Positions 1,582 to 58,310 of a stretch of 64,000 bases of DNA are shown piece after piece. The notes beneath the pieces were generated by a model that was given only the letters and a program-made list of their open reading frames with translations, was not told where the DNA came from and searched no databases. The position numbers were made by a program, and so were the translations under genes. Origin of the DNA: Octopus sinensis. Lineage: Eukaryota. The stretch lies in NCBI RefSeq assembly GCF_006345805.1, contig NC_042998.1, positions 98,890,001 to 98,954,000 of the forward strand, given 5' to 3'. Each line of letters opens with the position of its first letter. Position 1 is the stretch's first letter.

Positions 1582-4135
1582 TCATCATCTATTAACATCT
1601 ACTTTCCATGCTGGCGTGGGTTGGACAATTTAACTGAGGACTGGCAAATCAGATGGCTGCACCAGGCTCCAATCTGATCTGGCAGAATTTCTACGGTTGG
1701 ATGCCCTTCCTAATACCAACCACTCCGAGAGTGTAGTGGGTGCTTTTGCGTGCCACTGGCATGGGGGCCAGTCAGGGAGTACTGGCAATGGCCACATTCA
1801 AATGGTGTTTTTACATGCCACCTGCGCAAGAGGCAGTCCAGCGACACTGGCAATGACCATGCTCGAATATTCTTTCACGTGCCACTGGCACAAGTGCCAG
1901 TAAAGTGACGCTGGTAATGATCAGACTCGAATGGTGCTTTTTACTTGCCACCAGCATGGAAGCCAGTCAGCTACTTCTGGCAACGATCATGCTCGGATGG
2001 TGCACTTAGCACTCCACTAGCATGGATGCCAGTCACCGAATTTGATTTCAATTTCACTTTCACTTGCTTCAACAGGTCTTCGCAAGTAGAGTTTAGTGTC
2101 CAATGAAGGAAAGATACACATAAGTGGACTGGTTAGACCACTGGCATAGGCCATGGGTTATGGTCTCACTTGGCTTGCTGGATCTTCTCAAGCACAACAT
2201 ATTTCCAAAGGTCTCAGTCACTAGTCATTACCTCGGTGAGGCCTAATGTTTGAAGGTCGTGCTTCACAACCTCATCCCAGGTCTTCCTGGGTCTACCCCT
2301 TCCACAGGTTCCCTCAACGGCTAGGGTGTGGCACTTTTTCACACAGCTATCCTCATCCATTCTCATTACATGGTCATACCAGTGCAGTTGTCTCTCTTGC
2401 ACACCACATCTAATGCTTCTTAGGTCCAACTTTTCTCTCAAGGTACTTGCACTCTGTCAAGTATGCACACTGACATTACACATCCAGCAGAGCATACTGG
2501 CTTCATTCCTTGCAAGCTTACGTATGTCTTCAGCAGTCACAGCCCATGTTTCACTGCCATGTAGCATGGCTGTTCGTACATATGCGTTATACAGTCTACT
2601 TTTTACTCTGAGCAAGAGGCACTTTGTCACCTGCAGAGGTAAGAGCTCTCTGAACTTTGCCCAGGCTATTCTTATTCTAACAGCTACACTTTCAGTGCAC
2701 CCATCCCTGCTACTGGTTTGGTCACCTAGGTAATGGAAGCTATCAACTACTTCTGGTTTTTCTCCCTGGAATATGACAGCAGATGTTCTCTGCACATTTT
2801 CAGTGTTTATTGCTCTTGAGCATCTGCCACATACAAAATCTATCTTCCCAATCAGCCTTCCTTTGATATTGCTGCACCTCTTTTGTATTCATAGCTTACA
2901 CTGGGTACATCTTATAGAGTTTCTACCTACACCTTTTCTACAGATCGAGCAGGGCCATCTACCTGAAGGGATTTGTGGTTTGTCTGCCTTCCTGCTTACT
3001 AGGACTTTGGTTTTAGCTAGGTTGACTCTAAGGCCCTTCGATTCTAATTCTTGCTTCCACACCTGAAACTTCTCCTCTAGTTCTGATAGTGACTCAGCAA
3101 TTAGAGCAAGGTCATCAGCATAGAGGAGTTCCCAGGAGCATCCTGTTTTGAATTCCTCTGTTATTACCTGGAGGACTATGATAATAGGAGGGAGCTGACG
3201 ACTGAACCTTGGTGGACCTCTACTTCCACCTATAATTCTTCACTGTACTCGTTGCCAACCCTCACCTTATTAGTGTCCCTGTACAAACCTTGATCAGTTT
3301 TCACTAACCATTCATCTATCAATAGTTTCCTCATTGTCTACCAGATAAGGGATCGGGGGACCCTTTAAAAGTCTTTCTCCATGTTAACAAAAGCCAGGTA
3401 CAGAGGTTTATCTTTGGCTAGGTATTTCTCCTGCAGCTGTCTTACAAGAAATATAGCATCAGTGGTGCTTTTCCTTGGCATGAACCCAAACCACATCTCA
3501 TCTAAACTGATTCTTTCCCTAATTAGTTGGGCTATGACCCTCTCCATGACCTTCATTACCTGATCCAACAACTTGATACCTCTGTAATTATTTGTATCTA
3601 AAGCGTCACCTTTACTTTTGTAACAGTTGACTATGGTGCTGCTACACCGGTCATTGGATATGACTCTTTCGTGTATCACCTGGTTAACTATACAGGTGAC
3701 TATGCTATAGCCAACACCGCCAAATATTTTGAGCATCTCTGCAGTGATTCCTGATTGGCCGGGGGCTTTCCCTGTCCCTGTCTTCATACTTTTAATTGAT
3801 TTATCTACCAAGGTACTTTCAATCTGGAAAGCTGGTCCCTCTGTTGGGTCGACATTTGGCAGACTCTCTGTCTCCCATTCATTCTCTTTATTGAGCAACT
3901 TTTCATAGTGGTGTCTCCAAACCTCTCTCTTTGCAGCCTTGTTTAGTGCAAGTGAACCATCATCCGTGCGGACACATTTCTCTCCTACGACATCATGATT
4001 CTCTCTCACATACTTCCGTGCAACATGAAGTGCCCCAAGTCTTTGGTCCTCATGCAGAACATTGTCAAATTTTTTTCTTATCTACTTCCCCTCTGGCTAA
4101 ATAAACCTATCTCCTAGCTTCCCTTCTGGCAGTCT
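1582..4135 (-). mobile_element. 5'-truncated RTE-clade LINE with degenerate reverse transcriptase and 3' tail
   Basis: ORF pieces 3365-4009 (KAPG..GI..EMLK, NYRGIKLLDQVMKV, STTDAIFLVRQLQEKY, AFVNMEK), 2457-2795 and 2214-2441 (GRGRPRKTW); YADDL motif near 3120; tail as in the first feature. Confidence 0.9.
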
Positions 4136-4150
4136 GATATATATATATAT

Positions 4151-5165
4151 ACACTAAGGTGTTGGACAAAATAATGAAAACACTTAGCATCATAGCACCA
4201 TAATTATCTTAATTTTGAAATATCTATAAAACCATCAAAAGCTTGTTTATTCTTGTTTTCTGATTTATTATTAGCATTGCTTAATATATTTTGCTAAAAT
4301 TGCTGTTTCTTTTCAGATATCATCAGAAAAAGCTAATGAAAACTTATTAAAATGATGGATCTATCGGACTTTCAAAGAGGTCAAATTGTTGGTGCTCATA
4401 TGGCAGGCACAAGCATAACAAAAACAGCCAAAATGTTTGGTATATCAAGAAGTACTGTCTTGAAAGTAATGACGGCCTTTGAGAAAGAGGGAAAAACTTC
4501 CCCTTTGAAATAAAACTCCGGAAGAAAACCCAAACTTTCAGAAAGGGACCGTCAGACTCTTACACAAATTGTTAGAAAGAATCATAAAAGTACAGCACCC
4601 AAAATTACTGCAGAGCTTAATGACCACCTTGAGAACCCAGGTTCCACAAAAACTGTTCACTGGGAGCTGCACAAAGCCGGATTTCATGGGAGGGCTGCAA
4701 TCAGAAAACCACTACTTTCAACAACAAACGTTGCAAAGCATTTAGAGTGGAGTAAAAACCTACAGAATTAGTCCCTAGAGCAGTGGAAGAATGTTATTTT
4801 CTCGGACGAGTTGTCCTTTACCTTAATTCCAACCACAGCCGAGTATACGTGTGGAGACAGACAAAAGAAGCATTTGACTCAGACTGCCTTCTTTCAACTG
4901 TTAAACATGGAGGAAGATCTGTGATGATCTGGGGAGCTATATCTTGGGAATCCACCAGCCCAATGGCTTCCCTTCAAGACTATTTAAGTACTTTATCTGA
5001 TCAAATTCATCCTATAGTTGCAGAACTGTTTCTGGAAGGAAACACAATCTCTCAGGATGATAATGCAACAATTCACCAATTCACACAGCTAAAGTTGTTA
5101 CTGAATGGCACGGGGAACATTCTAGTGAAGTTGAACATCTTATCTGGCCACCACAGTCCCCAGAT
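4151..5165 (+). mobile_element. Degenerate Tc1-family DNA transposon lacking its right end, flanked by (TA)n
   Basis: Starts TA|CACTAAGGTGTTGGACAAAATAATG. Transposase remnants QWKNVIFSDE (~4782-4810), VKHGGRSVMIWGAISW and QDDNATIH; multiple stops and frameshifts. Confidence 0.8.
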
Positions 5166-5294
5166 ATATATATATATACATACACACATATACCCACTCT
5201 CATCATTTGACATTTATGTGTGTGTGTGTGTGTATACATATATATATATGTATGTATATACAATAAGAGAGAGAGAGAGAGAGAGAGAAGCACT

Positions 5295-6910
5295 TAACAA
5301 AAGATAAACCTCAGTACTTAGCTGTTGTTGACTTGGAGAAAGCTTTGAACAGGGTCCCCACTTCCCTCATTTGGTGAACAATGTGGAAGCTAAGGAAAGA
5401 TGAGTGGTTGGTGAGAGCCATAAAAGCTATGTACAAAGATGCTGTCAGAAAGGTGAAGGTCAGCAACAAGTATAGCAATGAATTTAGTATAGATGTAGGA
5501 GTTCACCAACGATTGGTTCTCACCGACCTCTTGTTTATTATAGTCCTCCATGCCATAACAGAGGAATTCAAGACTGGCTGATCCTGGGAGCTTCTCTATG
5601 CTGATGACCTTGTTCTCATAGTTGAATCACAACCTGAACTAGAGAGGACATTTCAGGTGTAGAAGCACAGTCAAGAATAAAAGTGCCATAGAGTTAATTT
5701 AACAAATACCAAAGTCCTAGTAAGTAAGAAAACAGACAAATCACCAGGGGATAGTTCTACTCTATATATAAGAAGTGTTGGGAGAAACTCCATTCAGTGA
5801 ACTAATGCAAGCTTTAAAGACAACAAGTATCATGGGAAGGTTAACAGAGAAAATAGTCTTTGTGTGTGGAAAATGTGCAGGTACAACAAGCAATAATAAT
5901 GTCCAGAGAATAGATTTCCTGCATTGCCTGGAAGGATCCTTAGAAGCTGGAGATTGCTTCTGTTACCTGGGCTATCAAGAGGAGGAAGTTCTGAAAACTT
6001 AGTTGCTAGAATAAGAATGGGCTGGGCAAAGTTCAGAGAGATACTACCTTTGTTGGTAACAAAGGTTTTCTTCCTTAGAGTGAAAGGCAGATTGTACAAT
6101 TATGCTACATGGCACTGAAACATGGGCTATGACTACAGAGGACATGCGAAGGCTTGAATGAAATGAGGTGAGTATGCCTGCTGGATGGGTAATGTCAGTG
6201 TACACTTACAACATAGTGTAAATGACTTTAGAGAAAAACTGGGTATAAGAGGCATCAGACATTGTGTGAATGAGAGAAGGCTGTGCTCGAATGGTCATGT
6301 GATGCATATAGATGAGAACAGCTGCATAAAGAAGTGCTGATCTCTAATTGTGAAAGGAACCTGTGGATGGAGTACATCCAGGAAAATGTGGGGCAAAGTG
6401 GTGAGAAAGGATCTTCAGATGCTGGGCCTCACTGAGGAGATGATAAGGAACTGAGACCTCTGGCGATTTGCTGTACTTGAGAAGATTGGAGCCATACATA
6501 CATGTACCTTACGGCTATGCTTCTACTCCCTCTCTCAGCAGAGAGAACTTTGACTGGCATGTGCCAGTGCCAATGCACCCATTCAGGTGCCATGTTAAAT
6601 GCACTAGTGCCAGTTCCACATAAAATGAACATTGCTAGTGCCATATACAACATACTCATGCTGGTGCCACATAAAATGCACTTGTGCTGGTGCCACGTAA
6701 GAAGCATCCATACCAGTAGCACTTAAAAAGTACCAAGCACACTTGGTAAAGTGGTTGGTATTAGTAAGGAAATCCTCCATGTTTAACCATGCTAAACAGA
6801 CAATTGGAACCAGGACAGTTCTCTGGCCTGGCAACTATTGTCAAACCATCCAATACATGTCAGCATGGAAAACAGATAGTGATGACAATGGTGATGATGA
6901 TGATGATGAT
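5295..6910 (+). mobile_element. Degenerate RTE LINE fragment (RT C-terminal half) plus tail
   Basis: DLEKA..RVP, VGVHQ...L.DLLFIIVL, YADDL (~5597) and ARIRMGWAKFREILPLL pieces; homologous to 2100-3400 in the opposite orientation. Confidence 0.85.
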
Positions 6911-7551: not shown

Positions 7552-9467
7552 ATAATAAATATTAGGGAATAAATCCAAATTTACTGGGAAAAAATCAGAT
7601 TTAGGATTAAATCGATTTTATAGTAAAATATTATAAAATATTATTCGAGACAAAACCACTATTTTGCAAAACAAACAAGGAAAGACTTAATCAATACATA
7701 AATTTTAATAAATAGTCAAAAAAACCGCCACTACAATCGTTTCTTGTCTTGATCGACAATCTTCAGGTGGACTTCCAATCTAAAAAATCAATATTTTAAA
7801 AAATAAAATAATAATTTTAAAATAATTAAAGTATGAATGAAAAATATAAGTATATAATCCATATATAACCTATCTATAATCCATATATAATCAATATATA
7901 AACAATATATAAACTAAAAAAACCTATCAACAATTAAATATAAAATATAAAATATAAAATATAAAATATAAAATATAAAATATAAAACAAAACAAAAAAA
8001 ATAATAATAATATAATATTAAACTATATATACACCCATACGCATATACCTAATTATATATAACCATATCTAACTACATACACTAAATCACACACCTATAT
8101 ATATATCCCTATACATACACATAAAAATGTCTAGGCAACTATAAATAAATAAAATAGCTAAATACTTCAACACAATACTTATTCATACTCCCACACACAC
8201 ACACATACAACCCACATTCACGCTCTAGAAAATGGACATCACTCAAAACTATGAACGGAGAAATAGAATAAATGGAATTAAAAATTATATTCACTTGGTA
8301 AAACGAACACTACTTAAAAATTATGAATGAAACAATGCAATAAAACAACAGACATCGCAAATAGACACAAATTACTACAAATTCCTTATCAAACCTACCA
8401 TGATAACCAAAACTCATAAAAACATATAATGATAACATCTCCCTTTACTAAACTCTATAACAAACCTATATAGCAATCCCCCTAACCTAAACATTCACAC
8501 ACAAATACACACACGTAAACTACACACCCACGACATATACAAATACCCACACCACTTACACATACCAATACATACATATAAACCTCAACATATACTCCAA
8601 AACCCACTCAACCCCACACAGACAAATAAACACAAAAATTATGAATGGATTCTTTTATAAAACTACCATGATAAGCTAAAACTCACAAAACAGAAATGAT
8701 AAAACCTCCCTTTACTAAACACTAAAACATACTTATATAGCAATTCCTTTAACCAATACATTCACACACAAAACCACTCGTAAACCACACACCCATAACA
8801 AATACAAACTCCCACCCCACTCACACACACCCACAAGTACATATAAGCCTCAACATATACACCAAACAAAATTACTTTACCAAGGAACTTAACATATATA
8901 TAAAAAGTATAACCACTCTGGAAACGAACATCTCTAAATTAATGAATGGAGAAATGGAAGAAATGGAATTAAAAATAAAATTCACGTGGCAAAACGAACA
9001 CCACTCAAAAATTATGAATGAAACAATATAATAAAACAACCAACATCGAAAAAAGACAAATTACTACGAATTCCCTAAAAAAAAAAAAAAAAACCATGAT
9101 AAACCAAAACTCTTAAAAAACATATAACGATAAAATCTCCCTTTGCTAAACTCTATAACAAACCTATATAGTAATCCCCCAAACCTAAACATTCACACAC
9201 AAACACACACGTAAACCACAGACCCACAACTTATACACATACCTAAACTAACTTATAAACCTCCATATACACCAAAACCCACTCCCTCCCACACAGACAA
9301 ATTAACTCATACATCCCAAAGCCTAAATAACAAACCCATATACACATTCACACACAAACACACACACACGCAAAACACACACACACAACAGATACATATA
9401 CTCCCTCACATATACGCATATACATACTCACTAAACTCAATATATACAACAATATTTACACACCCAC
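7552..9467. mobile_element. Penelope-like (pLTR-type) repeat block, strongly A/C-skewed, with internal ~240-410-bp tandem repeats
   Basis: Contains a type I minimal hammerhead, a known hallmark of Penelope-like element pLTRs. Sub-unit CCATGATAAnCnAAAACTC...CACACAnA..CnC.CGTAAAC recurs at ~8398, ~8666 and ~9094; a longer unit recurs at ~8225 and ~8919. No RT or GIY-YIG ORF is visible, so the class call is an inference. Confidence 0.55.
7726..7772 (-). ncRNA. Minimal type I hammerhead ribozyme motif
   Basis: Minus strand reads GTCCAC-CTGAAGA-TTGTC-GATCAA-GACAA-GAAAC-GATT-GTA^GTGGCG. CUGANGA and GAAA cores are intact; stem II TTGTC/GACAA; stem III AC/GT; GUA triplet; stem I CCAC/GTGG. Confidence 0.75.
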
Positions 9468-9989
9468 ATGTCGCTTCTACGGGGATGTATTCGCGCTGGG
9501 TTGACATGTAACAATAGAGCTTTGTATCCTAAAACCCTGCAGCCACACTTGCTGGCAGCTAAACAGATTGGTTTTCCATCTCTCTCTCAGAAAACACTTA
9601 TGTTAACCTCCACTAATTCAGCATGGTGGGACTACTTTCGACCACGTTTAGGGCCATTTACTCCCGCTGAGAAGAAAGGAAAACATATGATGCTGGCCTC
9701 TACTCATTGGAAACTCGAACGGATTGTTGCTATCAGCCTTCTGGGAACACTACCAGCTGCTATAATTAGCCCAAATTCTGTGACAGATTTTCTTTTAGTG
9801 ACTTCATTTCTATTACATAGTCATTGGGGTATTGATTCAATTTTGCAAGATTACGTAGCAAAGTATATTCCTTGGATCCAGAAGGTTTGGCTGCTTGTCA
9901 GCATTCTTGCAATGGCTGGATTACTGCATTTCAACTACAATGATATTGGCGCCTCTCGTGCTTTGCTCTTACTATGGAGTATTCATTAG
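9468..9989 (+). CDS. SDHD: Succinate dehydrogenase cytochrome b small subunit (CybS), intronless, 173 aa
   Basis: ASTHWKLERIVAISLLGTLPAA..SP....D..L...LLHSHWG...ILQDY......FNYNDIG....LLLLW matches the SDHD/CybS family (human: ASLHWTSER...LHGHWGL..VVTDY...FNYHDVGI...MLW). Heme His and quinone-site DY are retained. The basic, acid-free first ~54 aa resemble a mitochondrial presequence. ATG to TAG is uninterrupted. Confidence 0.93.
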   Translation: MSLLRGCIRAGLTCNNRALYPKTLQPHLLAAKQIGFPSLSQKTLMLTSTNSAWWDYFRPRLGPFTPAEKKGKHMMLASTHWKLERIVAISLLGTLPAAIISPNSVTDFLLVTSFLLHSHWGIDSILQDYVAKYIPWIQKVWLLVSILAMAGLLHFNYNDIGASRALLLLWSIH

Positions 9990-10074
9990 TCCTGAAATTG
10001 TACTCCTCCTACTCTGCCGCCCACACCACCCTCTCAGTACTACTCATTCAGCACATGCACACACATAAATTTAT

Positions 10075-10109
<35 letters not shown>

Positions 10110-10250
10110 GTGGAAATCCTGTTACTTACACATAACTAATATATAGGAAATAGAAATCAGCTTCCACTGGAAACCTCACTGCAGAATTTTTCACTTATTT
10201 TAGCTTGTGTATGTATCTGTGTTTATTATTATTATTGTTATTATTATTAT

Positions 10251-10470
10251 TGAAGGTGGCAAGCTGGCAGAATTGTTAGCATGCCGGGCAAACTGCTTAG
10301 CAGTATTTTGTCTGTCTTTATGTTCTCAGTTCAAATTCCGCCGAGGTTGACTTTGCCTTTCATCCTTTTGGGGTTGATAAAATAGGTACCAGTTGAATAC
10401 TGGGGTCGATGTAATTGACTATCCCCATCCCCCAAATTTCAGGCCTTGTGCCTGTAGTAGAAAGGATTAT
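10251..10470 (+). mobile_element. tRNA-derived SINE with Deu/Nin-type central domain
   Basis: GTTCAAATTCCGCCGAGGTTGACTTTGCCTTTCATCCTTTTGGGGTTGATAAAATAGGTACC core; related copies at ~47488-47700 (+), ~43555-43770, ~44390-44598 and ~45920-46090 (-). Confidence 0.7.
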
Positions 10471-10846
10471 TATTATTATAAAAACTAAGATAGTGGAATA
10501 GCAGAAACAGTAGTAGCACACTGGATTGAATGCTTTACAATAGTTAATTCCACCTCCTCAATTGTCTGAGTTTTAATTTCATTGAGGTATACTTTGTCCT
10601 CCATTCTATCAGGCTTGATTCAATAAATGTCAGCCTTGTACTGGGATCAGTTCACTTAACTGTACCACTATACTATCTGTTGCTTTGCATTAACCTAAGA
10701 GATTATTATTTTTGGCAGAGAGCACTTGTGGTTCCTTTCTTTCTTACACAAACACATAGCCTTAAATTCTTACTCTTTTGGTTATAAGTTCTCTAGAACT
10801 TGCCCACTCATTATAATTTACATTCTCAATATTGCGAGATATTTAC

Positions 10847-11213
10847 TATTAGAAGATTTATGGAGAAGTTCCAGCAAAGTGCTTATGATGTTATCAACAA
10901 TCTGTTTTTCACTTGGTGCTGCCCGCAGCGCCATTATTAAAATAGGCAGACCATTCTGTCGAATGAAGGACTCTTTGGATGCAGCATCAAATTTGCTTGA
11001 TGTAATTATTAGATGGATCTTTCCAGTCGCAAACCGTAACTGCAGTAGATCCTCTGCTGCATCTCGTCTCGATCCACCACACATGTATGATGGTCTGCTG
11101 CAGATTCTCTCAATTGTTTGCAAAAACTGATTACTTCGAGATCCACTTCGATCCATTTTACCTCCTTGAGGTTGGTTGTCTATCATTTTCTTACAGCGTG
11201 TTTCCTCCATCAT
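10847..11213 (-). CDS. AGTPBP1: Probable first coding exon of a cytosolic carboxypeptidase 1/4-like (Nna1) gene, N-terminal armadillo-like region
   Basis: FLQTIERI...RFATGKIHLIITS...NGLPILIMALRA...IVDNIISTLLELL parallels human CCP1 LLAQLEKI...RYVTSKILHLAQS...TGMEILLSTLEN...TTLNILSILVELV (from memory, not a search). Phase-1 donor AATA|GTAAAT at 10846. No further exon was found to its left within the window. Confidence 0.6.
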
Positions 11214-11229
11214 TCTGTCTAAAGCAGAT

Positions 11230-11660
11230 CTACCAGTAAAAAAAAGTCGCTTGTTTGCGTTTGTTTGAATACGTGTATGTTACACGAATGTATATAAGTA
11301 TATTTGCATGAGTGTAGACGGTTAATATTAAATTTTGGTCAGTATTGTTAATAAGAGCTGCAGAGACTTCCCTTGGAGAAATTCTGAACGAAAGAGAAGG
11401 CGTTCAGAGATGGAACGTAGACAGTTTGGAGAGGCGCTAAACAGGACGAAAAATAAAAACAGACATAAAACACGAAAAACAAAAACAAAAAAACTGTTCG
11501 ACAATAACAATTTTGGTCAAAGCAATGACCTATGAAGACTGGTCTATGTTGAAAAGGGACATCTTCTCGGTGATTCCTCACAGTTCAAATATAGGAATCC
11601 TAGGACAAAACATATGATTTGGAGGTCGAAAAAAATGACTTTAGAGAGTCGAAATTAATT
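11230..11660. promoter_or_regulatory. Putative promoter/5' UTR of the CCP1-like gene
   Basis: Unique, non-repeat sequence directly upstream of the ATG with visibly more CpG than the depleted background. A possible acceptor (T-run, ACTGGTAG) near 11233-11245 on the minus strand could instead make the exon internal. Confidence 0.3.
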
Positions 11661-14685: not shown

Positions 14686-15207
14686 TGTTGGTTTAGTGGG
14701 TTTCCCATCACATGAGGGTTCAGGCCCACTTGTAGCACCTTGGGAGAATGGCTTCTCTGAGCCAACCAAAACTTTGTGAGTGCATTTCATGGATGGAAAC
14801 TGAAAGAAGCCTGCTGTATATATATATATATATATATATATTCATCATCATCATTGTTCAACCGTGGTCGAGACAATGGAATTTACCATGGTAGAATTTA
14901 CTTCACGGTCCATCATGGCATTACGGAGGTCCTGTTGCTTGATGCCTGTTGGTTTAGTGGGTTTCCCACCACATGAGGGTTCAGGCCCACTTGTAGCACC
15001 TTGGGAGAATGGCTTCTCTGAGCCAACCAAAACCTTGTGAGTGCATTTCATGGATGGAAACTGAAAGAAGCCTGCTGTATATATATATATATATATATTC
15101 ATCATCATCATTGTTTGACCGTGGTCAAGACAATGGAATTTACCATGCTACGCCAGACTTCACGGTCCATCATGGCATTACGGAGGTCCTGTTGCTGGAT
15201 GCCTGTA
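14686..15207. repeat. Two-copy tandem duplication, period ~261 bp, each unit holding a SINE fragment, (TA)n and the 3' end of a second RTE family on the minus strand
   Basis: TGTTGGTTTAGTGGGTTTCCCA recurs at 14686 and 14947; minus-strand peptide QQQDLRNAMMDREV...MVNSIVSTTVEQ* then (TGA)n. Confidence 0.85.
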
Positions 15208-15476
15208 TCCCTGGAGATTACATCAGGGTAGGAAAGGTCTCGGTCTCTAGTCATTCCTGATGATTACCTTAAGTCTTGATATACATATATATTTAAGTGC
15301 TAATATCAGACAGTGAGAATGATATCCACTGCATTAGTGGGTAAGTAATCTTTATCCATAGGTTAACAAAGCTACAATTGTTTATAGTGAGAAGATGTCT
15401 CAGTAATTATCAAACCTGTGACATGAGACACTGGTACTTTTCTACATCTTGGATATACATGTGCGTGCATGTTTGA

Positions 15477-20962: not shown

Positions 20963-23900
20963 TCATACAAAAACAAGAAATTTGAGAGAAAGAAAGTTAA
21001 ATATAAATTGTCTTTGAGAGTTTCTTGGGCCAATGCACTGTTCTGCCCGATCTTGTAACATACGGTGTGCTCGGGCACCCGTTGACGGCGAAGGTGGTGT
21101 TGTGGGAGCCGGTGAAGGCAAAGGTGTCTGTGCAGGTGAAGGTGTTTGTGCAGGTGAAGGTGTTGTTAAAGGTGCATAGGTGGGTGTGGCAAGGTTGTCA
21201 TCAAAAGATGAAGATGTCTCAAAGTATGCTTTCTTCAGTCGGTCCACGGAAACAGTCTCCGAAGGACCACTTATTTCAATAGTGAACACCTTAGGTGTGC
21301 GAGAAAGTACACGGAAAGGTCCTTTATAGGGAGAAACAAGTGGTCCCTTGACAGAGTTGTCCCGAACGAAAACATGCGACCAAGTGTCCATATCCGGTGG
21401 GAGATTGTTTCCTGGGAACCATGGGTGGAAGATTCGAGAAATATGAACGCAGTCTGGCGACATAGGTCGCCGGATCATGGGGCTGGGAAGTGTCTGGCAC
21501 CAACATCGTACCAGGCAATGCCAGTGTGGTACCATACAGTAGCTCTGCAGAAGAGAACCCCAGGTCTGCTTGACAGCAGTCCGACAACGGAGAAGCACAA
21601 TTGGCAGAAATTCAATCCAGGACTGTGGATCTGAAGGGGCACGAAGAGCGGCCTTGAGCTGTCTCTGGAACCGTTCAACTAATCCATTAGACGCTGGATG
21701 ATAGCTGGTAGTGTGGATATGATGCACACCTAAAATGCGCGACAATTCGCGAAATAGCGAAGCTTCAAACTGACGTCCACGATCAGTAGTCAATCTGGAT
21801 GGGACTCCGAAACGGGAAATCCAGTTTGAAACGAAGGCTCGCGCAACAGTCTCAGCAGAAATGTCTGCTATTGGAATGGCTTCTGGCCAGCGGGAGAAAC
21901 GATCGACACAAGTTAACAGATAAGAAAACCCGCGACTCACAGGTCATGGTCCAACCAGATCGATGTGGACATGGCGAAAACGGGCCTCCGTAGGGGGAAA
22001 ATGTCCAAGCGGGGCACGAACGTGCCGTTGAATCTTCGACCGTTGACACTTGGAGCAGGTGCGTGTCCAAGAAGTAATAGTGCGACGCATATTCGGCCAG
22101 AAAAACCGAGCAGTGGTCAGCTTAAGGGTGGCAGCGATGCCAGGATGTGATAAGGAGTGCAGTGCTTCAAACACTGAGCATTGATGATTCTCAGGCACGA
22201 GTGGCCTCGGAGAACCAGTGGAAGTATCACAGAGAATGGTGCCTTCGGCTGACGGAAGCGGAAGGTAGGAAAACTGGCAACAGGAGAACTTGGGAGAAGT
22301 TAAGTCTAACGACGCCAAAGGTGGCTGCTCCTGCAAGATGGCAGTTAAGTCGATAGCAGCAGGAGACGAAAGGGTGCAGACTGGAAGGCGAGAGAGAGCG
22401 TCAGCACGAACGTTCTCTTTTCCAGGTATGTGTCGAATGTTACTAGTGAATTGAGAGATAAAATCCAGGTGCCGGAAAGCACAAGGCGATAGTTTGTCCG
22501 TTTTTGAACACAGGGCAAACGTAAGGGGCTTGTGATCCGTATAGATCACAAAATCTCGCCCTTCAAGTTGATGCTGGAAATGACGAACCGATAGATAGAT
22601 CGCTAGGAGCTCACGATCAAAGGTGCTGTATCGTCGTTCAGCTGGTTGCAGTTGGCGGGAAAAGAAAGCCAGAGGTCGAATATGATCATCCACTGTGTGT
22701 TGTAACACAGCGCCAATCGCAGTGTCCGATGCGTCTACAGTCAAAGAGAGAGAAGCACCAGGAACCGGATGTGCAAGCAAAGAAACAGAAGCCAGCTCCT
22801 TCTTAATGGACTCAAAGGCTGTGAGTGCCTCAACAGAGAGGGTGACTTGACCGTCCTTTCTAGGAGTGTCCTTTAATAGCCTGGTGAGAGGAAGTAGCTT
22901 ATCTGCACAACTGGGAATAAAACGTCTGTAGAAATTGATCATCCCTAGATAATGCCTGAGCTGGCGCAAGGAAGTGGGAGGTGCGATGCGTTGAATGGCA
23001 TCGACCTTTGACGACAGGTGGCTGATTCCATTCGAATCAATATGATGGCCTAGAAAATCTAGGGAAGAGCGTCCGAAAACACACTTGTCGGGATTTATAC
23101 GTATACTATAAGGGCGAAGACGCTGAGGAAGGTGCTGGAGATGATTTTCACGTGTGTCGCTCGCAATGAGTATATCATTGACATAGGCAAACACAAAATC
23201 AAGACCGCGGACAACCTCATCAATGAAACGCTGGAAAGTGCTAGTAGCATTCCGCAAACCGAAACTCATATACAAAAACTCAAAACACCCAAAAGGGATA
23301 GTGATCACAGTTTTCGGAACGTCGGCTGGGTTGACCAGTATTTGATGGTACGCGCGTATAAGGTCGACCTTCGAAAAAATGGTACAACCATGGAGATTTG
23401 CCGTAAAGTCCTGTAGAATTCTGATTGGATATCTGTCGGCTATTGTTACAGCATTGAGGCGTCGATAGTCTCTTACCGGGCGAAAATCAGACTCGCCCTT
23501 TCGCGCCAAATGAAGGGGAGACGCCCATGGGCTGGTGGAGGGGCGTATAAGGCCAAGTTGAAGCATGTGCTCAAACTCGGCCCTAGCCGTTTTTAGTCGG
23601 TCAGGCGCAAGGCACCGTGGGCGCGAAAATACAGGCGGACCAGTGGTGGTGATAAAATGGAGTGTCGAGTGGGTAGGCTTTTCCGGTTGAGAGGCAATGT
23701 CCACTAGCTCCGAAAATGAAGCCAAAAGAGAGTGAAAAGCGTCTCCAGAGGTGGCAACAAAGAATGTCGGGCTAAGGACCGCATAGGTGGAACTCCCAGT
23801 CGGCGTAGAGAGCGACGTCGTGCTATCAAGAAGCCTCCGACGCCTGACATCCACTAATAGATTAAACCTATCCAAGAAATCAGCGCCGAGAATAGGATGC

Positions 23901-24220
23901 GGGATGTCAGCGATGACGAAAACCCATTGAAAATCTCGACGAAGGTTGATGTCGAGGCGCAGCGAAATATGACCGAAGGTGGTTATGGGAGACGAGTCAA
24001 TGGTATGCAAGACAATTGAAGAGCGCTTGGGCTTGTCTGCAGTCAGACGAAGGGGCCAGATGCTGCAACAAGAGCCGGTGTCCACCATGAAGAATTTCTT
24101 CGACACCAGATCTTTTACAAAGAACGCACGATTTTTGGGAAACGAGAAGGAAGAAGGTGACGTGCTCACCTCCTCCGGATTTAGTTTCCCGAGGGCTGGA
24201 AAGTACATGGCTGGGTACAC
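20963..24220 (-). pseudogene. Gypsy pol (protease, RT, RNase H, integrase), disrupted
   Basis: VDTGS protease; RT catalytic motif reads YVND rather than YVDD; VDAS RNase H; HHCC zinc finger; HIDLVGP, TDRG and NGLVER integrase core. In-frame TGA at 21944-21946 (GP*PVSRG) and two compensating frameshifts in the integrase C-terminal part (true frame given by ORF 21324-21587). Confidence 0.92.
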
Positions 24221-24867
24221 CGTTCTGCCTTTACGGCAGAGCCACTGCGACTACGACTGCGTGGTCGGCGCCCGATCGCACGGCACAGATCATCGATTCG
24301 CCGCGTGAGCGCATTGAGCCGCTCGGCTAGTGAATTTTGCGTCGGAGAAACTGTCGGAGGGGGCTCTGTACATGCGCACAGGCCTTGCGATGGAGATGGT
24401 TTCGGAAATTCCAATATTTTATCGGCCATCGTGGCAATCTGGTCTACTGACACAGACTCCAGTACCGTGGCCAACATTGTCTTCACGTGGGCAGGCAACC
24501 TGGAGAAGAGAATCCTCCGTAAGAGCGGCGCGTCCGCTGCGTTCCCGCTCAGCTCCCGTAGGTGGCGCAGGAACTGGGATGGAGTCCTGTATCCCAACAG
24601 TTCCTCGGCCATCAGCTCCTTAAAATTACTCTCCTCCGACCGCGTGTTGTGGCGGAGGATTTCGGCTTTTACGGACGCGTATGTGGCGTCCGGGTGGGGA
24701 CTTATTATGAGATCCCTGACCGATGTGGCGAGTCGGGGATGTAAACTTGAATATAGCAGATGCAACTGCTGCTGTTGAGGAACGGCATGTGCGTCAAAAT
24801 GCGACTCCACCTGGGCAAACCACAGACCCACATCCCCTGTGAATAAAGGCAAACCTGATGCAGCCAT
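24181..24867 (-). CDS. Gypsy gag ORF (228 aa)
   Basis: LPLFTGDVGLWFAQVESHF...RTPSQFLRHLREL...IATMADKI typical of Gypsy gag; RSRSRS tail; ends TCG GGA AAC TAA overlapping pol. Confidence 0.85.
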   Translation of the reverse strand: MAASGLPLFTGDVGLWFAQVESHFDAHAVPQQQQLHLLYSSLHPRLATSVRDLIISPHPDATYASVKAEILRHNTRSEESNFKELMAEELLGYRTPSQFLRHLRELSGNAADAPLLRRILFSRLPAHVKTMLATVLESVSVDQIATMADKILEFPKPSPSQGLCACTEPPPTVSPTQNSLAERLNALTRRIDDLCRAIGRRPRSRSRSGSAVKAERCTQPCTFQPSGN

Positions 24868-25248
24868 GTTTGTCTGAAGAATCGCCTGTCAGAAAGGGGC
24901 ATAAGGTATGAACGAGAAGTGGAGAACACGTGGAACCGACAAAGCAAATCAAAATCGTGTTTTGTGTACTGGTGTGTGTGTGTGTGCACCTCGTGGGTAG
25001 TAAAGAATAAGTGTGTGTGTGTGCACAAAGGAAAAACAAAAGGTACAGAAAAGGAAAAAAAAATAATGTGTATGTGTTTCTTTTTTTTTTTTTGAGTGTA
25101 CTGAGTGCAATGAATAAAACTTTTGTTTTTTACGCACCTTCGCCGTCCTGAAAGGAAAAGAAAAATGAAAGTGAAAACTGAGTGTTCAGTGCTCTAACTG
25201 GCAAAACCTGTTCGCTGCGTCTTCTGTTCTTTTTTTTTTTTCTACTTA

Positions 25249-44046: not shown

Positions 44047-44611
44047 TAATTTTCAACTAGCAATAACCATGCCTCGGATTTACCTCATTGGCCAATGGTA
44101 CCGCCTCTTCAGACTTCCACCAGCAAGCTAGATAACTAATGCATTAGACATTCAACACACAATTTAAGCAGTAATACAACAAAAGACTGCACCACACCTC
44201 AAGAAAGAAAAAAACTAATGCAATACAATACTGGGAAGGGTTTGCACACTCCCAACAACAGAAGAGAACACACAATGCTGCACACACCCTCAGGAACATG
44301 AAGGTGTAGCAGATGATGAAGAAATTTGCCTCAAACGGCCAAATGTTGAACAATTATATAATAATAATACAACAACAAAACAACACTAATGGTTTCAAAT
44401 TTTGGCATAAGGCTAGCAAATTCAGGGCAGGAGGTTAAGTCCAGTGACCCCAGTGCTCTACCAGTACTTATTTTATTTTATTGACTCTGAAAGGATGAAA
44501 GAAGTTGACCTCAGCAGAATTTGAACTCGGAATGTAAAGATGAACAAAATGACACTAAGTATTTTGACTTGTGTGCTAACGATTGTGTCAGGTCACCGCC
44601 TAAATAATAAT

Positions 44612-44665
<54 letters not shown>

Positions 44666-45395
44666 TTCCCCACCAGAAATTACCAAAAACATGCAATGAA
44701 AAGAAATATTACAAGTAACTGCAGAATATGTGGAGATGGACAAGAAACAATAAATCATATTATCTCTAGCTGCCCAGTCCTGGCTAAGAAGGAATATATT
44801 CACAGACATGACAGAGTTGGAACCTACATACATTGGAAGCTATGCCAACATTATGGAATAACAACAGAAAAAAGATGGTATAGGCACACACCAGAAAAGG
44901 TCACAGAAAAGGTCACAGAAAACGAGAAAGCAACCATACTCTGGGATATGCCGATACACACAGATAGAGAAATTAAGGCCAACAGACCAGATATAGTTGT
45001 CAGAGACCATGAAGAAAAAAAATGCTTTCTAATTGATGTATCAATACCGGCTGATGACAACGTGTCTCTAAAAGAAATGGAGAAGCTCTCAAAATACAAA
45101 GACCTGGAAATAGAGGTAACTAGAATGTGGAATCTGAAAACAGAAACAATTCCTATCATAGTAGGTGCATTAGGCATGATAAAAAAATATTCAGACAAAT
45201 ACATAACAAAAACACCAGGACTTACAAACACATATAACATACAGAAAATTGCACTACTAGGCACTGCACACATCCTACGCAGAACACTTTCCATACAATA
45301 ACCATCAGAGCATCACAACAAATCACAGCACATACCCAAGGCACACAGAGCTGCGCTCGGTAGTGAAGTGAAAGCACGCTATAAAAATAAAACTA

Positions 45396-56061: not shown

Positions 56062-58310
56062 ATCATCGTTTAACGTCCATTTTCCATGCTAGCATGGGTT
56101 GGACAGTTTGACCGGGGTCTGGAAAGCCAGGAGACTGCACCAGGCTCCAGTCTGATCTGGCAGTGTTTCTACAGCTAGATGCCCTTCCTAACGCCAACCA
56201 CTCCATGGGTGTAGTTGGTACTTCTTATGTGCCACTGACACAGAAGCCAGTCAAGGCGGCACTGGCATTGGCCATGTTCGGATGGTGCTTTTTATGTGCC
56301 AAACGCACGGGTATCACAGCTACAATTTCCATTTGATTTTCATTTTGATGTTGATATACTTGACTCAATAGGTCTCCTCAAGCACAGCAGGTTACCCTAC
56401 TTCCCAATGTACTTTTGAATGGGATGGTGCTGGTTATGTGAAACTGGTCTAGGATTCAGCCGTGAACTCTCTTTATTTGCTGGGTCTTTGCAGTCACAGC
56501 ATATCTCCAGAGGTCTCGGTCTTTCGTCATTGCCTCTGTGAGGCCCAACATTCAAAGGTCATGCTTGACCACCTCATCCTATGTCTTCCTGGGTCTATCT
56601 CTATTCCGGATTCCTTCAACTGCTTGGGAGTGGTACTTCTTCACATATCTCTCCTCATCCATCCATAGTACATGACCATACCAGCACAAATGTCTCTCTT
56701 GCACGCCACATCCTATGCTTCTTATGTGTAACATTTCTCTCAGGGCGCTTACACTGTTGTGTGTGCACACTGACATTACACATGCAGCAGATCCTGCTAG
56801 CGTCATTTCTTTCGAGCCTACACATCTCCTCCACAGTCACAACCAATGTTTCACTGCTGTGAAGCATGGCAGTTCACACACGGGCATCGTACAATCTACC
56901 TTTCACTCTGAATGAGAAGCCCTTAGTCACCAGTAGGGGTAGAAGCTTTCTGAACTTTGCCCTGACTATTCTTGTTCTAGTGGTAACACTCTCTGAACAT
57001 CCATCCCCACTACAGACTTGGTCACCTAGGTAGCGTTAGCTATCAACTACTTCTAGTGTTTCCTCCGGCATGTGATGGAATCTGTTTTCTGAGCATCTGT
57101 GTGTTTATTGCCCCTGTGCATCTGCCACACACAAAAGCTATCTTCTTGGTTAATCTTCCTTTGTTGTTGTTGTACCTCTTATGTGTCCATAGCTTACACT
57201 GAGTACATCTTATGGAGTTTCTACCAACACCTTTTCTATAGATCGAGCAGGGCCACCTACCTGAGTGGGTATGTGATGTGTTCACCTCACTACTTACTAG
57301 AACTTTGGTCTTTGCTACATTGACTCTAAGGCCTTTTGATTTTAAACCTAGCTTCCACACCCAAATTTTCTTTTCTAGTTCTGGTAGGGATTCTGCTAAG
57401 AGGGCTAGGTCATCAGCATAGAGGAGCTCTCAGGGACAACCCTGGAGGACTATGATGAATAAAAGGGGACTGAGAGCTGAGCCTTGGTGGACCCCTACTT
57501 CTACCCAGGATTCTTCACTATATTCATTTCCAATCCTAACCTTACTAATGGCCTCTCTGTATAGAGCATGTACAGTCCTTATTAACCATTCGTCAATCCC
57601 CAGTTTCTGCATTGACCACAAGATAAGGGATTGGGGGACCCTGTCAAAGGCTTATTCCTAGTCCACAAAAGCTAAGTATAGGGGTTTATCTTTAGCTATG
57701 TATTTCTCCTGCAGTTGTCAAACCAGGAATATGGCATAAGTGGTGCTTCTACCCGGCACAAAACTAAACTGCATCTCATCTAAGCAGACTCTGTCCCTAG
57801 CAAGATGGGCTATGACCCTCTCCATGACCTTCATCACCTGATCCAGTAGTTTGATACCCCTGTAGTTATTTCTATCTAGAGCATCACCTTTGCCCTTGTA
57901 GCAGTTGACTATGGTGCTGCTACGCCAGTCATTGGGTATGACTCCATCATGAACTACCTGGTTTACAATGCGGGTGACTAGGCAATAGCCCACACCACCA
58001 GATGTTTTAAGCATCTCAGCAAAGATTCCTGATGGACCGGGGGCTTTTCCTAGCTTCATACCCTTAATTGCTTTATCTACAAGGAAGCTGTCTTTTGGGA
58101 TAGCTTGACCCTCTACTGGGTCAACATTTGGCAGGCTCTCCTCCTCCCATTCATTCTCCATGTTCAGCAGTCTTTCATAATGGCTTCTCCAAACCTCTTA
58201 CTTTTCCGAATCATTAAAAGCAAGTGCACCATCATCCATGCGGACACATTTCTCTCCTATGACATTACAATTTTCTCTCACACACTGTCTTGCAATCCAG
58301 GTTGTATGAC
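56062..58310 (-). mobile_element. 5'-truncated RTE LINE with degenerate RT and tail
   Basis: ORFs 57718-58161, 57430-57621 (GVHQGSALSPLLFIIV), YADDL (~57410-57425), 57043-57360 and 56579-56867. Confidence 0.9.

What the first reader, a model, noticed from the sequence alone, without database searches (positions are those of the whole stretch)
9468..9989. Intact intronless SDHD nested antisense inside the CCP1-like gene: candidate functional retrogene or complex II paralogue
Seen: a 173-codon ORF with no stops or introns, a presequence-like N-terminus and retained heme/quinone residues (LHSHWG, QDY), lying ~860 bp beyond the donor of the opposite-strand CCP1-like exon. Established: vertebrate SDHD has introns, and intronless copies commonly arise by retroposition. 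Inference: an intact ORF among decayed repeats suggests selection. It may be the sole relocated SDHD or a tissue-specific second anchor subunit, for example for sperm or low-oxygen respiration. No poly(A) remnant or TSD is visible, so it is either old or not a retrocopy.
Basis: partly seen in the sequence, partly recalled or inferred. Interest (0 to 1): 0.75.

Follow-up and report, generated by a model that had tools for sequence, protein, structure and literature searches.

The report
Young SDHD retrocopy fused to CCP1 cDNA
The intact intronless SDHD reading frame is real, but it is a very recent reverse-transcribed copy of the normal spliced octopus SDHD gene, joined tail-to-tail to a cDNA fragment of the CCP1 gene at a third place in the genome; nothing indicates it is a working second complex II subunit.

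Summary
The 173-codon ORF (9468-9989, +) is real and belongs to the SDHD/CybS family (Pfam 71 bits; heme His and Asp-Tyr aligned to pig and human SDHD). It is not the octopus SDHD gene. That gene is spliced (4 coding exons plus one alternative exon over about 43 kb) in O. sinensis, O. vulgaris and O. bimaculoides, and is also spliced in Argonauta. Window 9467-10826 is the exact exon-to-exon concatenation of that mRNA from CDS base 6, plus 837 nt of 3'UTR. It shows 0 differences in 523 aligned positions covering the CDS and 5 in 832 UTR positions against the O. sinensis parent. The neighbouring "CCP1-like exon" is not an exon. Window 11239-10827 (-) equals exons A-D and 26 nt of exon E of the real CCP1 gene, spliced; in that gene they span 16 kb on another chromosome. 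This fragment is joined bluntly at 10826|10827 to the end of the SDHD copy. The SDHD copy is therefore not nested in CCP1. It is half of a composite, inverted, two-gene cDNA insertion with no poly(A) and no target-site duplication. At about 0.4% divergence an untouched ORF is expected under neutrality (P about 0.6-0.75), so intactness is no evidence of selection. Verdict: a young processed retrocopy, probably a pseudogene in waiting, with an unusual structure. Interest is low to moderate.

The parts
9467..10826 (+). Processed (intronless) copy of the octopus SDHD mRNA, isoform X2 type. It runs from base 6 of the parental CDS to 837 nt beyond the stop codon and is truncated at both ends.
   Evidence: blastn and alignment to the spliced exons of L001 (O. 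sinensis) and L002 (O. vulgaris). The flanks are unrelated to the parental locus.
9468..9989 (+). 173-codon ORF. It is identical to residues 3-175 of SDHD isoform X2 (P0007, O. sinensis and O. vulgaris); the parental Met-Ala start is lost and the second Met is used.
   Evidence: tblastn 100% over 173 aa.
9495..9496 (+). Exon 1 | exon 2 junction of the parental mRNA (TTCGCG|CTGGGT). The 16-codon alternative exon of isoform X1 is skipped.
   Evidence: Parental GT...AG boundaries read in L001; alignment.
9666..9667 (+). Exon 2 | exon 3 junction (ACTCCCG|CTGAGAA).
9826..9827 (+). Exon 3 | exon 4 junction (GTCATTG|GGGTATT), inside the Trp codon of LHSHWG.
9990..10826 (+). 3'UTR of the SDHD mRNA carried along in the copy. 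It includes the parent's (CA)n microsatellite (10079-10109) and a SINE-like repeat (about 10240-10475). It holds all copy-specific changes: 10327 C, 10375 T, 10433 C, 10510 G, a 2-bp deletion near 10423 and a shorter (CA)n.
10826..10827 (.). Blunt tail-to-tail junction between the SDHD copy and the CCP1 cDNA fragment (...ACATTCT|CAATATTGCG...), with no shared or filler bases.
   Evidence: Three-way display of the window, the SDHD parent and CCP1 exon E.
10827..11239 (-). Processed 5' fragment of the CCP1 (cytosolic carboxypeptidase 1) mRNA. It covers at least 21-26 nt of 5'UTR, then exons A (11239-11143), B (11143-10988), C (10988-10920), D (10919-10853) and the first 26 nt of exon E (10852-10827), giving codons 1-128 and then an out-of-context Arg-Met-stop. 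Its outer (right) end may extend further if CCP1 has an upstream 5'UTR exon.
   Evidence: family; P0018 N-terminus; exon-by-exon match to L005; 99.2% over 129 aa to P0023.
7800..9466 (+). Left flank: a G-depleted (G 2-10%, A about 47%) tandem-repeat tract that ends exactly at the 5' junction of the SDHD copy. Whether it is target DNA or part of the insertion is unresolved.

Best explanation
Window 9467-11239 is a composite insertion made from two reverse-transcribed cellular mRNAs. It sits in TE-rich DNA that is neither the SDHD nor the CCP1 locus. One half is a nearly full-length processed copy of the SDHD mRNA (+ strand). The other half is the first ~413 nt of the CCP1 mRNA (- strand). They are joined 3'-end to 3'-end with their 5' ends pointing outward. 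The structure is shown directly: exact exon-exon junctions, carried UTRs, spliced parents on two other chromosomes and unrelated flanks. It is inferred that both pieces arrived in one event. The event was either two cDNA fragments captured and ligated at a chromosome break by end joining, or a reverse transcriptase extending the 3' end of one nucleic acid on the other mRNA. The reverse transcriptase would come from one of the octopus retroelements (RTE or Dong LINEs, or LTR elements). This route does not depend on poly(A), which explains the missing poly(A) tail and target-site duplication. The insertion is about as old as the O. sinensis / O. vulgaris split, at roughly 0.4% divergence. The SDHD ORF is intact because too little time has passed for it to decay. 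It brought no promoter and faces a G-poor satellite, so it is most likely a silent processed pseudogene in waiting, not a second complex II anchor subunit.
For: (1) Window 9467-9495, 9496-9666, 9667-9826 and 9827-10826 match L001 exons 1-4 at 100%, 100%, 100% and 98.1%, and the parental GT/AG introns (38 kb, 2 kb, 2 kb) are missing exactly. (2) A spliced SDHD exists in O. sinensis (L001), O. vulgaris (L002), O. bimaculoides (L006) and Argonauta (L003). (3) The minus-strand CCP1 piece matches five separate exons of the real O. sinensis CCP1 gene (L005, spread over 16 kb) contiguously at 100% apart from 3 bases, and stops 26 nt into exon E. Argonauta has the same split exon structure. (4) Apart from these exons, the window shares only dispersed repeats (78-91% identity, not collinear) with L001 and L005. 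(5) The junction 10826|10827 is blunt. No other CCP1 piece is in the window. There is no TSD and no poly(A). (6) Age: copy-O. sinensis 5/1355, O. sinensis-O. vulgaris 5/1355, and each about 57/1355 to O. bimaculoides. The polarised sites are mixed, as expected near the speciation time. (7) Neutral expectation: P(intact ORF) is 0.63-0.76 at d = 0.3-0.5%. (8) Neither the 173-aa product nor the 131-aa chimeric CCP1 ORF is on record as a called gene or protein in about 15 billion sequences. (9) Reverse transcriptase sources: active RTE and Dong LINEs in Octopus (PMC9115989), and LTR-element and LINE RT ORFs in this window.
Against: Zero substitutions in 523 aligned CDS positions against 4-5 in 832 UTR positions is mildly low under one uniform rate (Poisson P = 0.04-0.08; 0.28 if only the two clearly copy-derived changes are counted). 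Weak constraint therefore cannot be excluded. The species and assembly of the window are unknown. If it comes from a third member of the O. vulgaris complex, the copy could be even younger and the dating is off. The single-event mechanism is inferred from the zero-distance junction only, because the empty site could not be fetched. The right boundary is uncertain: the homology ends at an acceptor-like ACAG|G, so an unseen CCP1 5'UTR exon may continue beyond 11239. Expression was not testable.
Confidence: 0.85

Rival explanations
1. It is a young functional retrogene: a second, intronless SDHD expressed from a fortuitous upstream promoter, for example in testis or under hypoxia. It would supply an alternative complex II anchor subunit lacking only the first two residues of the presequence.
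For: The ORF is intact and 100% identical to residues 3-175 of the parental isoform X2, so the protein would be fully competent. There are 0 CDS changes against 4-5 UTR changes.
Against: Intactness is the neutral expectation at this age. No promoter was carried along, since the copy starts inside the CDS. The upstream DNA is a G-depleted satellite. The product is not recorded anywhere as a called protein. The copy is half of a scrambled two-gene cDNA insertion whose other half is plainly non-functional: 128 codons of a 1291-aa protein followed by a stop.
Confidence: 0.07
2. It is an assembly or library artefact: a chimeric cDNA molecule (two cDNAs ligated tail-to-tail) was incorporated into the genome assembly.
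For: Tail-to-tail cDNA chimeras arise in library preparation. There are no poly(A), TSD or other integration hallmarks.
Against: The copy carries private differences from the parents of both sequenced species: 4 substitutions, a 2-bp deletion, a shorter (CA)n, and 3 bases in CCP1, two of which restore the O. bimaculoides-like Ala codon. No adaptor or poly(A) lies at the junction. It is embedded in 9 kb and 52 kb of ordinary repeat-rich genomic sequence on either side.
Confidence: 0.04
3. Two separate events produced it: an older, longer CCP1 retrocopy was later hit by an SDHD retrocopy (or the reverse), and deletion removed the remainder so that the two now abut.
For: Retrocopies can land in one another. 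The CCP1 piece shows slightly more differences per site (3/413) than the SDHD piece (5/1355).
Against: No further CCP1 sequence lies on the far side of the SDHD copy or anywhere else in 64 kb. A perfectly blunt abutment with both partners truncated would need an extra precise deletion. The divergence difference rests on 3 and 5 changes and is not significant.
Confidence: 0.1
4. SDHD is ancestrally intronless and single-copy at this position in molluscs.
For: None found.
Against: Spliced SDHD genes with the same exon structure occur in three Octopus species and Argonauta. The window copy contains the spliced product of those exons, 3'UTR repeats included.
Confidence: 0.01

Closest known systems
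Processed pseudogenes and retrocopies of nuclear genes (human SDHD itself has several processed pseudogenes; this is from memory and the literature search here, did not confirm it)
   Same: All introns are removed exactly, mRNA UTR is carried along, the location is unlinked to the spliced parent, no promoter is carried, and the 5' end is truncated.
   Different: There is no 3' poly(A) tail and no target-site duplication. The 3' end is truncated inside the UTR and fused to another gene's cDNA in inverted orientation.
Chimeric retrocopies formed by reverse-transcriptase template switching (L1-mediated mRNA-mRNA or U6-mRNA chimeras; recalled from memory)
   Same: Two unrelated cellular RNAs are copied into one insertion with a sharp junction.
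   Different: In those chimeras both parts have the same orientation and the 3' part ends in poly(A) flanked by TSDs. Here the parts are inverted (3' ends in the centre) and both hallmarks are absent.
Twin-priming inversions of LINE-1 insertions (recalled from memory)
   Same: The insertion consists of two oppositely oriented reverse-transcribed segments.
   Different: Twin priming inverts the 5' segment of a single RNA, and the two cDNAs are primed from the target's outer ends and meet in the middle, with poly(A) kept at one outer end. Here two different mRNAs are involved, the 5' ends face outward, and no poly(A) is present.
cDNA or RNA-templated insertions captured at double-strand breaks by end joining (yeast Ty1 cDNA capture; human templated-sequence insertions without TSD or poly(A); recalled from memory)
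   Same: There is no TSD and no poly(A), the fragments are truncated at arbitrary internal positions, the join is blunt or has minimal homology, and orientation is arbitrary.
   Different: This has not been shown in cephalopods. The pre-insertion site was not available here, so break repair is inferred rather than demonstrated.
Functional mitochondrial retrogenes and duplicated complex II subunits (for example the stage-specific SDH subunit isoforms of Ascaris, whose SDHD is PDB 3vr8)
   Same: An extra, intact copy of a complex II anchor subunit gene.
   Different: Those paralogues are diverged, expressed and conserved. This copy is identical to its parent in protein sequence, and its expression and conservation could not be tested here.

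Membership tests
SDHD / CybS protein family (PF05328) | Profile match above the curated threshold | tested here: met
   71 bits against a 27-bit cutoff, E 1e-19; PDB SDHD chains at E 1e-19 to 1e-21.
SDHD / CybS protein family (PF05328) | Heme axial His and quinone-site Asp-Tyr (pig His D79, Asp D90, Tyr D91; residue roles are from established structural work, recalled) | tested here: met
   LHSHWG...QDYV aligns column for column with pig and human LHGHWG...TDYV.
Processed retrocopy of a spliced gene | All parental introns absent, with exact exon-exon junctions | tested here: met
   Three junctions at 9495|9496, 9666|9667 and 9826|9827 equal the parental GT...AG boundaries.
Processed retrocopy of a spliced gene | An intron-containing parent exists elsewhere in the genome, and the flanks are unrelated | tested here: met
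   L001, L002 and L006 are spliced loci. Outside the exons only dispersed repeats are shared.
Classical LINE (L1-type, target-primed) retrocopy | 3' poly(A) tail | tested here: not met
   Homology ends at 10826 inside the UTR and is followed at once by CCP1 antisense sequence.
Classical LINE (L1-type, target-primed) retrocopy | Target-site duplication flanking the insert | tested here: not met
   No direct repeat of 10 nt or more links the left flank with the 2.8 kb right of the insert. The only 9-mers are AT-rich and 0.7-0.8 kb away.
Functional retrogene | Purifying selection on the copy (dN/dS below 1) | tested here: inconclusive
   0 substitutions in the CDS, so no ratio can be formed. Poisson P = 0.04-0.28 depending on the rate used.
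Functional retrogene | Transcription and translation of the copy | not testable with these tools
   No RNA-seq access. The exact 173-aa product is absent from the protein collection and the gene index, which is only weak negative evidence.
Functional retrogene | Retention at the orthologous site across species | not testable with these tools
   The window holds no annotated single-copy gene that would allow the orthologous interval to be fetched.
Gene nested in an intron of CCP1 | The window is collinear with the CCP1 locus, and the neighbouring exon is bounded by splice sites | tested here: not met
   The real CCP1 locus is L005. The window matches only its exons A-E, contiguously, and the match ends mid-exon with no donor.
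Template-switch chimeric retrocopy | Both parts in the same orientation, with shared poly(A) and TSD | tested here: not met
   The parts are inverted, with no poly(A) or TSD.
cDNA capture at a double-strand break (end joining) | No TSD, no poly(A), arbitrary truncation, blunt or microhomology joins | tested here: met
cDNA capture at a double-strand break (end joining) | The empty site in relatives shows a simple break or small deletion at the insertion point | not testable with these tools
   The orthologous empty site could not be retrieved.

The most novel reading that the evidence does not exclude
The composite records a poly(A)-independent way of making retrocopies in cephalopods: the 3' end of one RNA or cDNA primes reverse transcription on another mRNA, or several cDNAs are captured at a break. 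In addition, the SDHD half, still protein-identical to its parent, is transcribed from the flanking satellite and is an incipient second complex II anchor gene.
Probability: 0.06. Interest if true: 0.6.

Novelty: new member of a known kind. Interest (0 to 1): 0.25.

Why it matters
For annotation, this ORF should be labelled a processed SDHD retrocopy or pseudogene, not a gene. The adjacent "CCP1 exon" should likewise not be used to build a CCP1 gene model at this locus. For octopus complex II biology nothing changes, because the working SDHD is the spliced gene on another chromosome. The modest point of interest is mechanistic. A young, well-preserved, inverted two-mRNA insertion without poly(A) or TSD shows how cellular mRNAs are copied back into a genome whose known active LINEs are of the RTE and Dong type. 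It would serve as a clean presence/absence marker within the O. vulgaris species complex.

Tried and rejected
1. I first read the minus-strand ORF 11213-10850 as a real CCP1 first coding exon with a GTAAAT donor at about 10849 and 23 nt of intron. This was rejected once P0018 showed that 'KYLAIL' is coding sequence and L005 showed the five-exon structure.
2. I considered intron loss in a genuine Octopus CCP1 exon. This was rejected because the real O. sinensis gene keeps all four introns.
3. The word-indexed protein search with the CCP1 fragment returned nothing, although a 99% identical protein (P0018) is in the same database. That negative was a sensitivity failure, not evidence.
4. Exact look-ups of the 173-aa and 131-aa ORFs and of P0008 and P0018 found no gene on record.
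5. I searched for a TSD and for a CCP1 5'UTR exon to the right of 11239, within the 10 kb upstream of CCP1 in O. sinensis and 5 kb in Argonauta. Only microsatellite noise turned up.
6. I tested whether the G-depleted left flank is a G-to-A hypermutated copy of something in the window or the fetched loci, using a reduced-alphabet BLAST. No source was found.
7. The literature search for octopus retrocopies found nothing specific. The search for SDHD processed pseudogenes did not yield a usable citation.

Full report
**Observation.** The + strand of the window carries an ATG-to-TAG ORF of 173 codons at 9468-9989.
- It matches Pfam CybS (PF05328) at 71 bits against a curated cutoff of 27.
- It matches the SDHD chains of pig, human and chicken complex II at E 1e-19 to 1e-21.
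- The first His of LHSHWG and the Asp-Tyr of QDYV fall in the columns of LHGHWG and TDYV. By established structural work these are the heme ligand and quinone-site residues (recalled).
- So the ORF and its family assignment are real.

**The normal gene is spliced.** The nearest database proteins are the annotated Octopus SDHD isoforms and an Argonauta orthologue.
- Isoform X2 (P0007, 175 aa) is identical in O. sinensis and O. vulgaris.
- The O. sinensis gene spans about 43 kb of chromosome CM016860.1 (L001).
- It has four coding exons plus an alternative 16-codon exon that makes isoform X1.
- The same spliced structure is found in O. vulgaris (L002) and O. bimaculoides (L006).
- SDHD is also spliced in Argonauta hians (L003), where the coding sequence lies in at least three separate blocks.
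- SDHD is therefore ancestrally spliced in octopods, and a spliced SDHD exists alongside the window copy.

**The window copy is a processed copy of that mRNA.**
- Window 9467-9495, 9496-9666, 9667-9826 and 9827-10826 correspond to exons 1 (from CDS base 6), 2, 3 and 4 of L001.
- The junctions fall exactly at the parental GT...AG boundaries.
- The match continues for 837 nt beyond the stop codon through the parental 3'UTR, including its (CA)n microsatellite and a SINE-like repeat.
- Upstream of 9467 and downstream of 10826 there is no similarity to the parental locus.
- There is no poly(A) at 10826. The parent continues ACACACAAAT..., whereas the window continues CAATATTGCG....

**The "CCP1-like exon" is also a cDNA fragment.**
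- An exhaustive profile search showed that the minus-strand ORF 11213-10850 aligns to residues 1-119 of a 1200-aa Argonauta protein named cytosolic carboxypeptidase 1-like. That protein carries TPR_CCP1_N, Pepdidase_M14_N and Peptidase_M14 domains.
- In Argonauta these residues are encoded by four to five exons (L004).
- The O. sinensis CCP1 protein (P0018, P0023) begins with the same sequence and continues ...SNSKYLAIL-VNCDAC....
- The real O. sinensis CCP1 locus (L005, chromosome CM016861.1) splits this region into these exons:

| Exon | L005 coordinates |
|---|---|
| A | 9975-10071 |
| B | 15133-15288 |
| C | 21037-about 21105 |
| D | 24856-24922 |
| E | 25768 onward |

- Window 11239-10827 (minus strand) is A+B+C+D plus the first 26 nt of E, precisely spliced. 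It is 100% identical except for one base in A and CGGGCA instead of CGTGTA at the C/D junction. That difference gives Arg-Ala, as in O. bimaculoides, instead of Arg-Val.
- The CCP1 match ends mid-exon at 10827, the base adjoining the last SDHD base. The join is blunt...ACATTCT|CAATATTGCG....
- Beyond these exons the window shares only dispersed repeats with L005 and L001. No other CCP1 piece occurs anywhere in the 64 kb.
- The SDHD copy is therefore not nested in the CCP1 gene. The window is a third locus carrying a composite of two processed cDNA fragments in inverted orientation, with 3' ends together and 5' ends outward.

**Age and selection.** The four-way alignment has 1355 ungapped mRNA positions.

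| Comparison | Differences |
|---|---|
| Copy vs O. sinensis parent | 5 (0 in 523 positions covering the CDS, 5 in 832 UTR positions) |
| Copy vs O. vulgaris parent | 8 |
| O. sinensis vs O. vulgaris parents | 5 |
| Each of the three vs O. bimaculoides | about 57 |

- Polarising with O. bimaculoides gives a mixed signal. Two changes are derived in the copy (10327, 10375). At two sites the copy keeps the ancestral state that both parents have lost (10433, 10510). At two sites the copy and O. sinensis share a derived state (10169, 10454).
- This mixture is what is expected if the copy arose from a haplotype segregating around the O. sinensis / O. vulgaris split. It is also expected if the window comes from a close third taxon, and the source of the window is unknown.
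- Under a neutral simulation at d = 0.3-0.5%, the 519-nt frame stays intact in 63-76% of trials.
- The probability of zero CDS changes given the UTR rate is 0.04-0.08, or about 0.28 if only the two unambiguous copy-derived changes set the rate.
- No dN/dS can be computed. Intactness is therefore not evidence of selection.

**Mechanism (inferred).** Classical target-primed LINE retroposition predicts a poly(A) tail and a target-site duplication. Neither is present.
- Template-switch chimeras keep both parts in one orientation, and twin priming puts 5' ends in the centre. Neither fits.
- The simplest readings are two. In the first, two truncated cDNA fragments were ligated to each other and into a chromosomal break by end joining. 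In the second, reverse transcription of one mRNA was primed from the 3' end of the other nucleic acid, which gives sense-X followed by antisense-Y on each strand, followed by integration.
- Reverse transcriptase sources are plentiful. RTE and Dong LINEs are reported as potentially active in Octopus (PMC9115989). The window itself holds LINE RT fragments and a Ty3/gypsy-like element with gag, RT-RNaseH and integrase ORFs.
- The right outer boundary (11234-11239) coincides with an acceptor-like ACAG|G of CCP1 exon A. The cDNA may therefore continue into an unseen 5'UTR exon. It was not found within 10 kb upstream of the real gene.

**Function.** The copy begins inside the CDS, so it carried no promoter.
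- Its upstream neighbour is a G-depleted tandem repeat.
- Its partner fragment encodes 128 of 1291 CCP1 residues followed by Arg-Met-stop.
- Neither ORF is on record as a called gene or protein.
- If transcribed, the SDHD ORF would give a protein identical to isoform X2 minus Met-Ala, so function is not excluded. Nothing supports it, however.

**Verdict.** It is a new member of a known kind (processed retrocopy or pseudogene) with an uncommon composite, poly(A)-less architecture. Interest is low to moderate.

Noticed in passing
window 7800-9466: A strongly strand-asymmetric tract on the + strand: G 2-10%, A about 47%, C about 25%. It is built of tandem units (265-bp period at 8386-8866, with a longer period of about 0.65-0.7 kb and G-containing patches near 8230-8330 and 8900-9000). 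It ends exactly at the 5' junction of the SDHD copy. It looks like either a C-strand, telomere-like or CA-rich satellite, or a G-to-A depleted sequence. No source copy was found with a reduced-alphabet search.
   Followed up: partly
window 20966-24867 (- strand): A Ty3/gypsy-like LTR retroelement with three long, nearly contiguous ORFs: gag-like DUF7041 (228 aa), RT plus RNaseH plus integrase zinc finger (758 aa), and integrase core (325 aa). It sits in a block of 46-50% GC against a background of about 35%, so it is probably a recent insertion.
   Followed up: partly
L001 17924-17968 (O. sinensis SDHD locus); also O. bimaculoides isoform X1 (P0009): The parental SDHD gene has a conserved alternative 16-codon exon (KWSGTLQQNNERFT...) that inserts into the mitochondrial presequence and gives isoform X1 (189 aa). 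The retrocopy derives from the exon-skipped X2 form.
   Followed up: no
window 10920-10923 versus L005 21102-21105 and 24856: At the CCP1 exon C/D junction the window reads CGGGCA (Arg-Ala, as in O. bimaculoides P0019), whereas the O. sinensis reference gene reads CGTGTA (Arg-Val). That is two changes within 4 nt. It suggests a parental allele or species different from the O. sinensis reference, or change in the parent after the copy was made.
   Followed up: partly
window 10240-10475 (inside the SDHD 3'UTR copy): A SINE-like repeat of about 235 bp flanked by (TTA)n. It is already present in the parental 3'UTR of all three Octopus species. Many copies at 77-85% identity lie in the introns of the SDHD and CCP1 loci.
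   Followed up: no
window 9826|9827; L001 50518 and 52604: The last SDHD intron of octopods interrupts the Trp codon of LHSHWG after its second base. From memory this is the same position and phase as the human exon 3/4 boundary (c.314/315), which would point to an ancient conserved intron. This was not checked with a tool.
   Followed up: no
(tool behaviour): The word-indexed homologue search returned no hit for the 123-aa CCP1 fragment, although a 99% identical N-terminus (P0018) is in the same database. Negatives from that tool on short queries should not be trusted.
   Followed up: yes
window 2457-4009 (-), 4783-5307 (+), 44540-45301 (+), 57718-58161 (-): Further transposable-element debris. 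Judged by eye from the translations, there are LINE-type reverse-transcriptase fragments (two related copies at 3365-4009 and 57718-58161) and a Tc1/mariner-like transposase fragment; Pfam gave no hit for these. There is also an RT C-terminal zinc-binding ORF preceded by a poly-Asn run (zf-RVT at 23.6 bits, below the 27.5-bit cutoff). No bona fide host gene was recognised anywhere in the 64 kb.
   Followed up: partly
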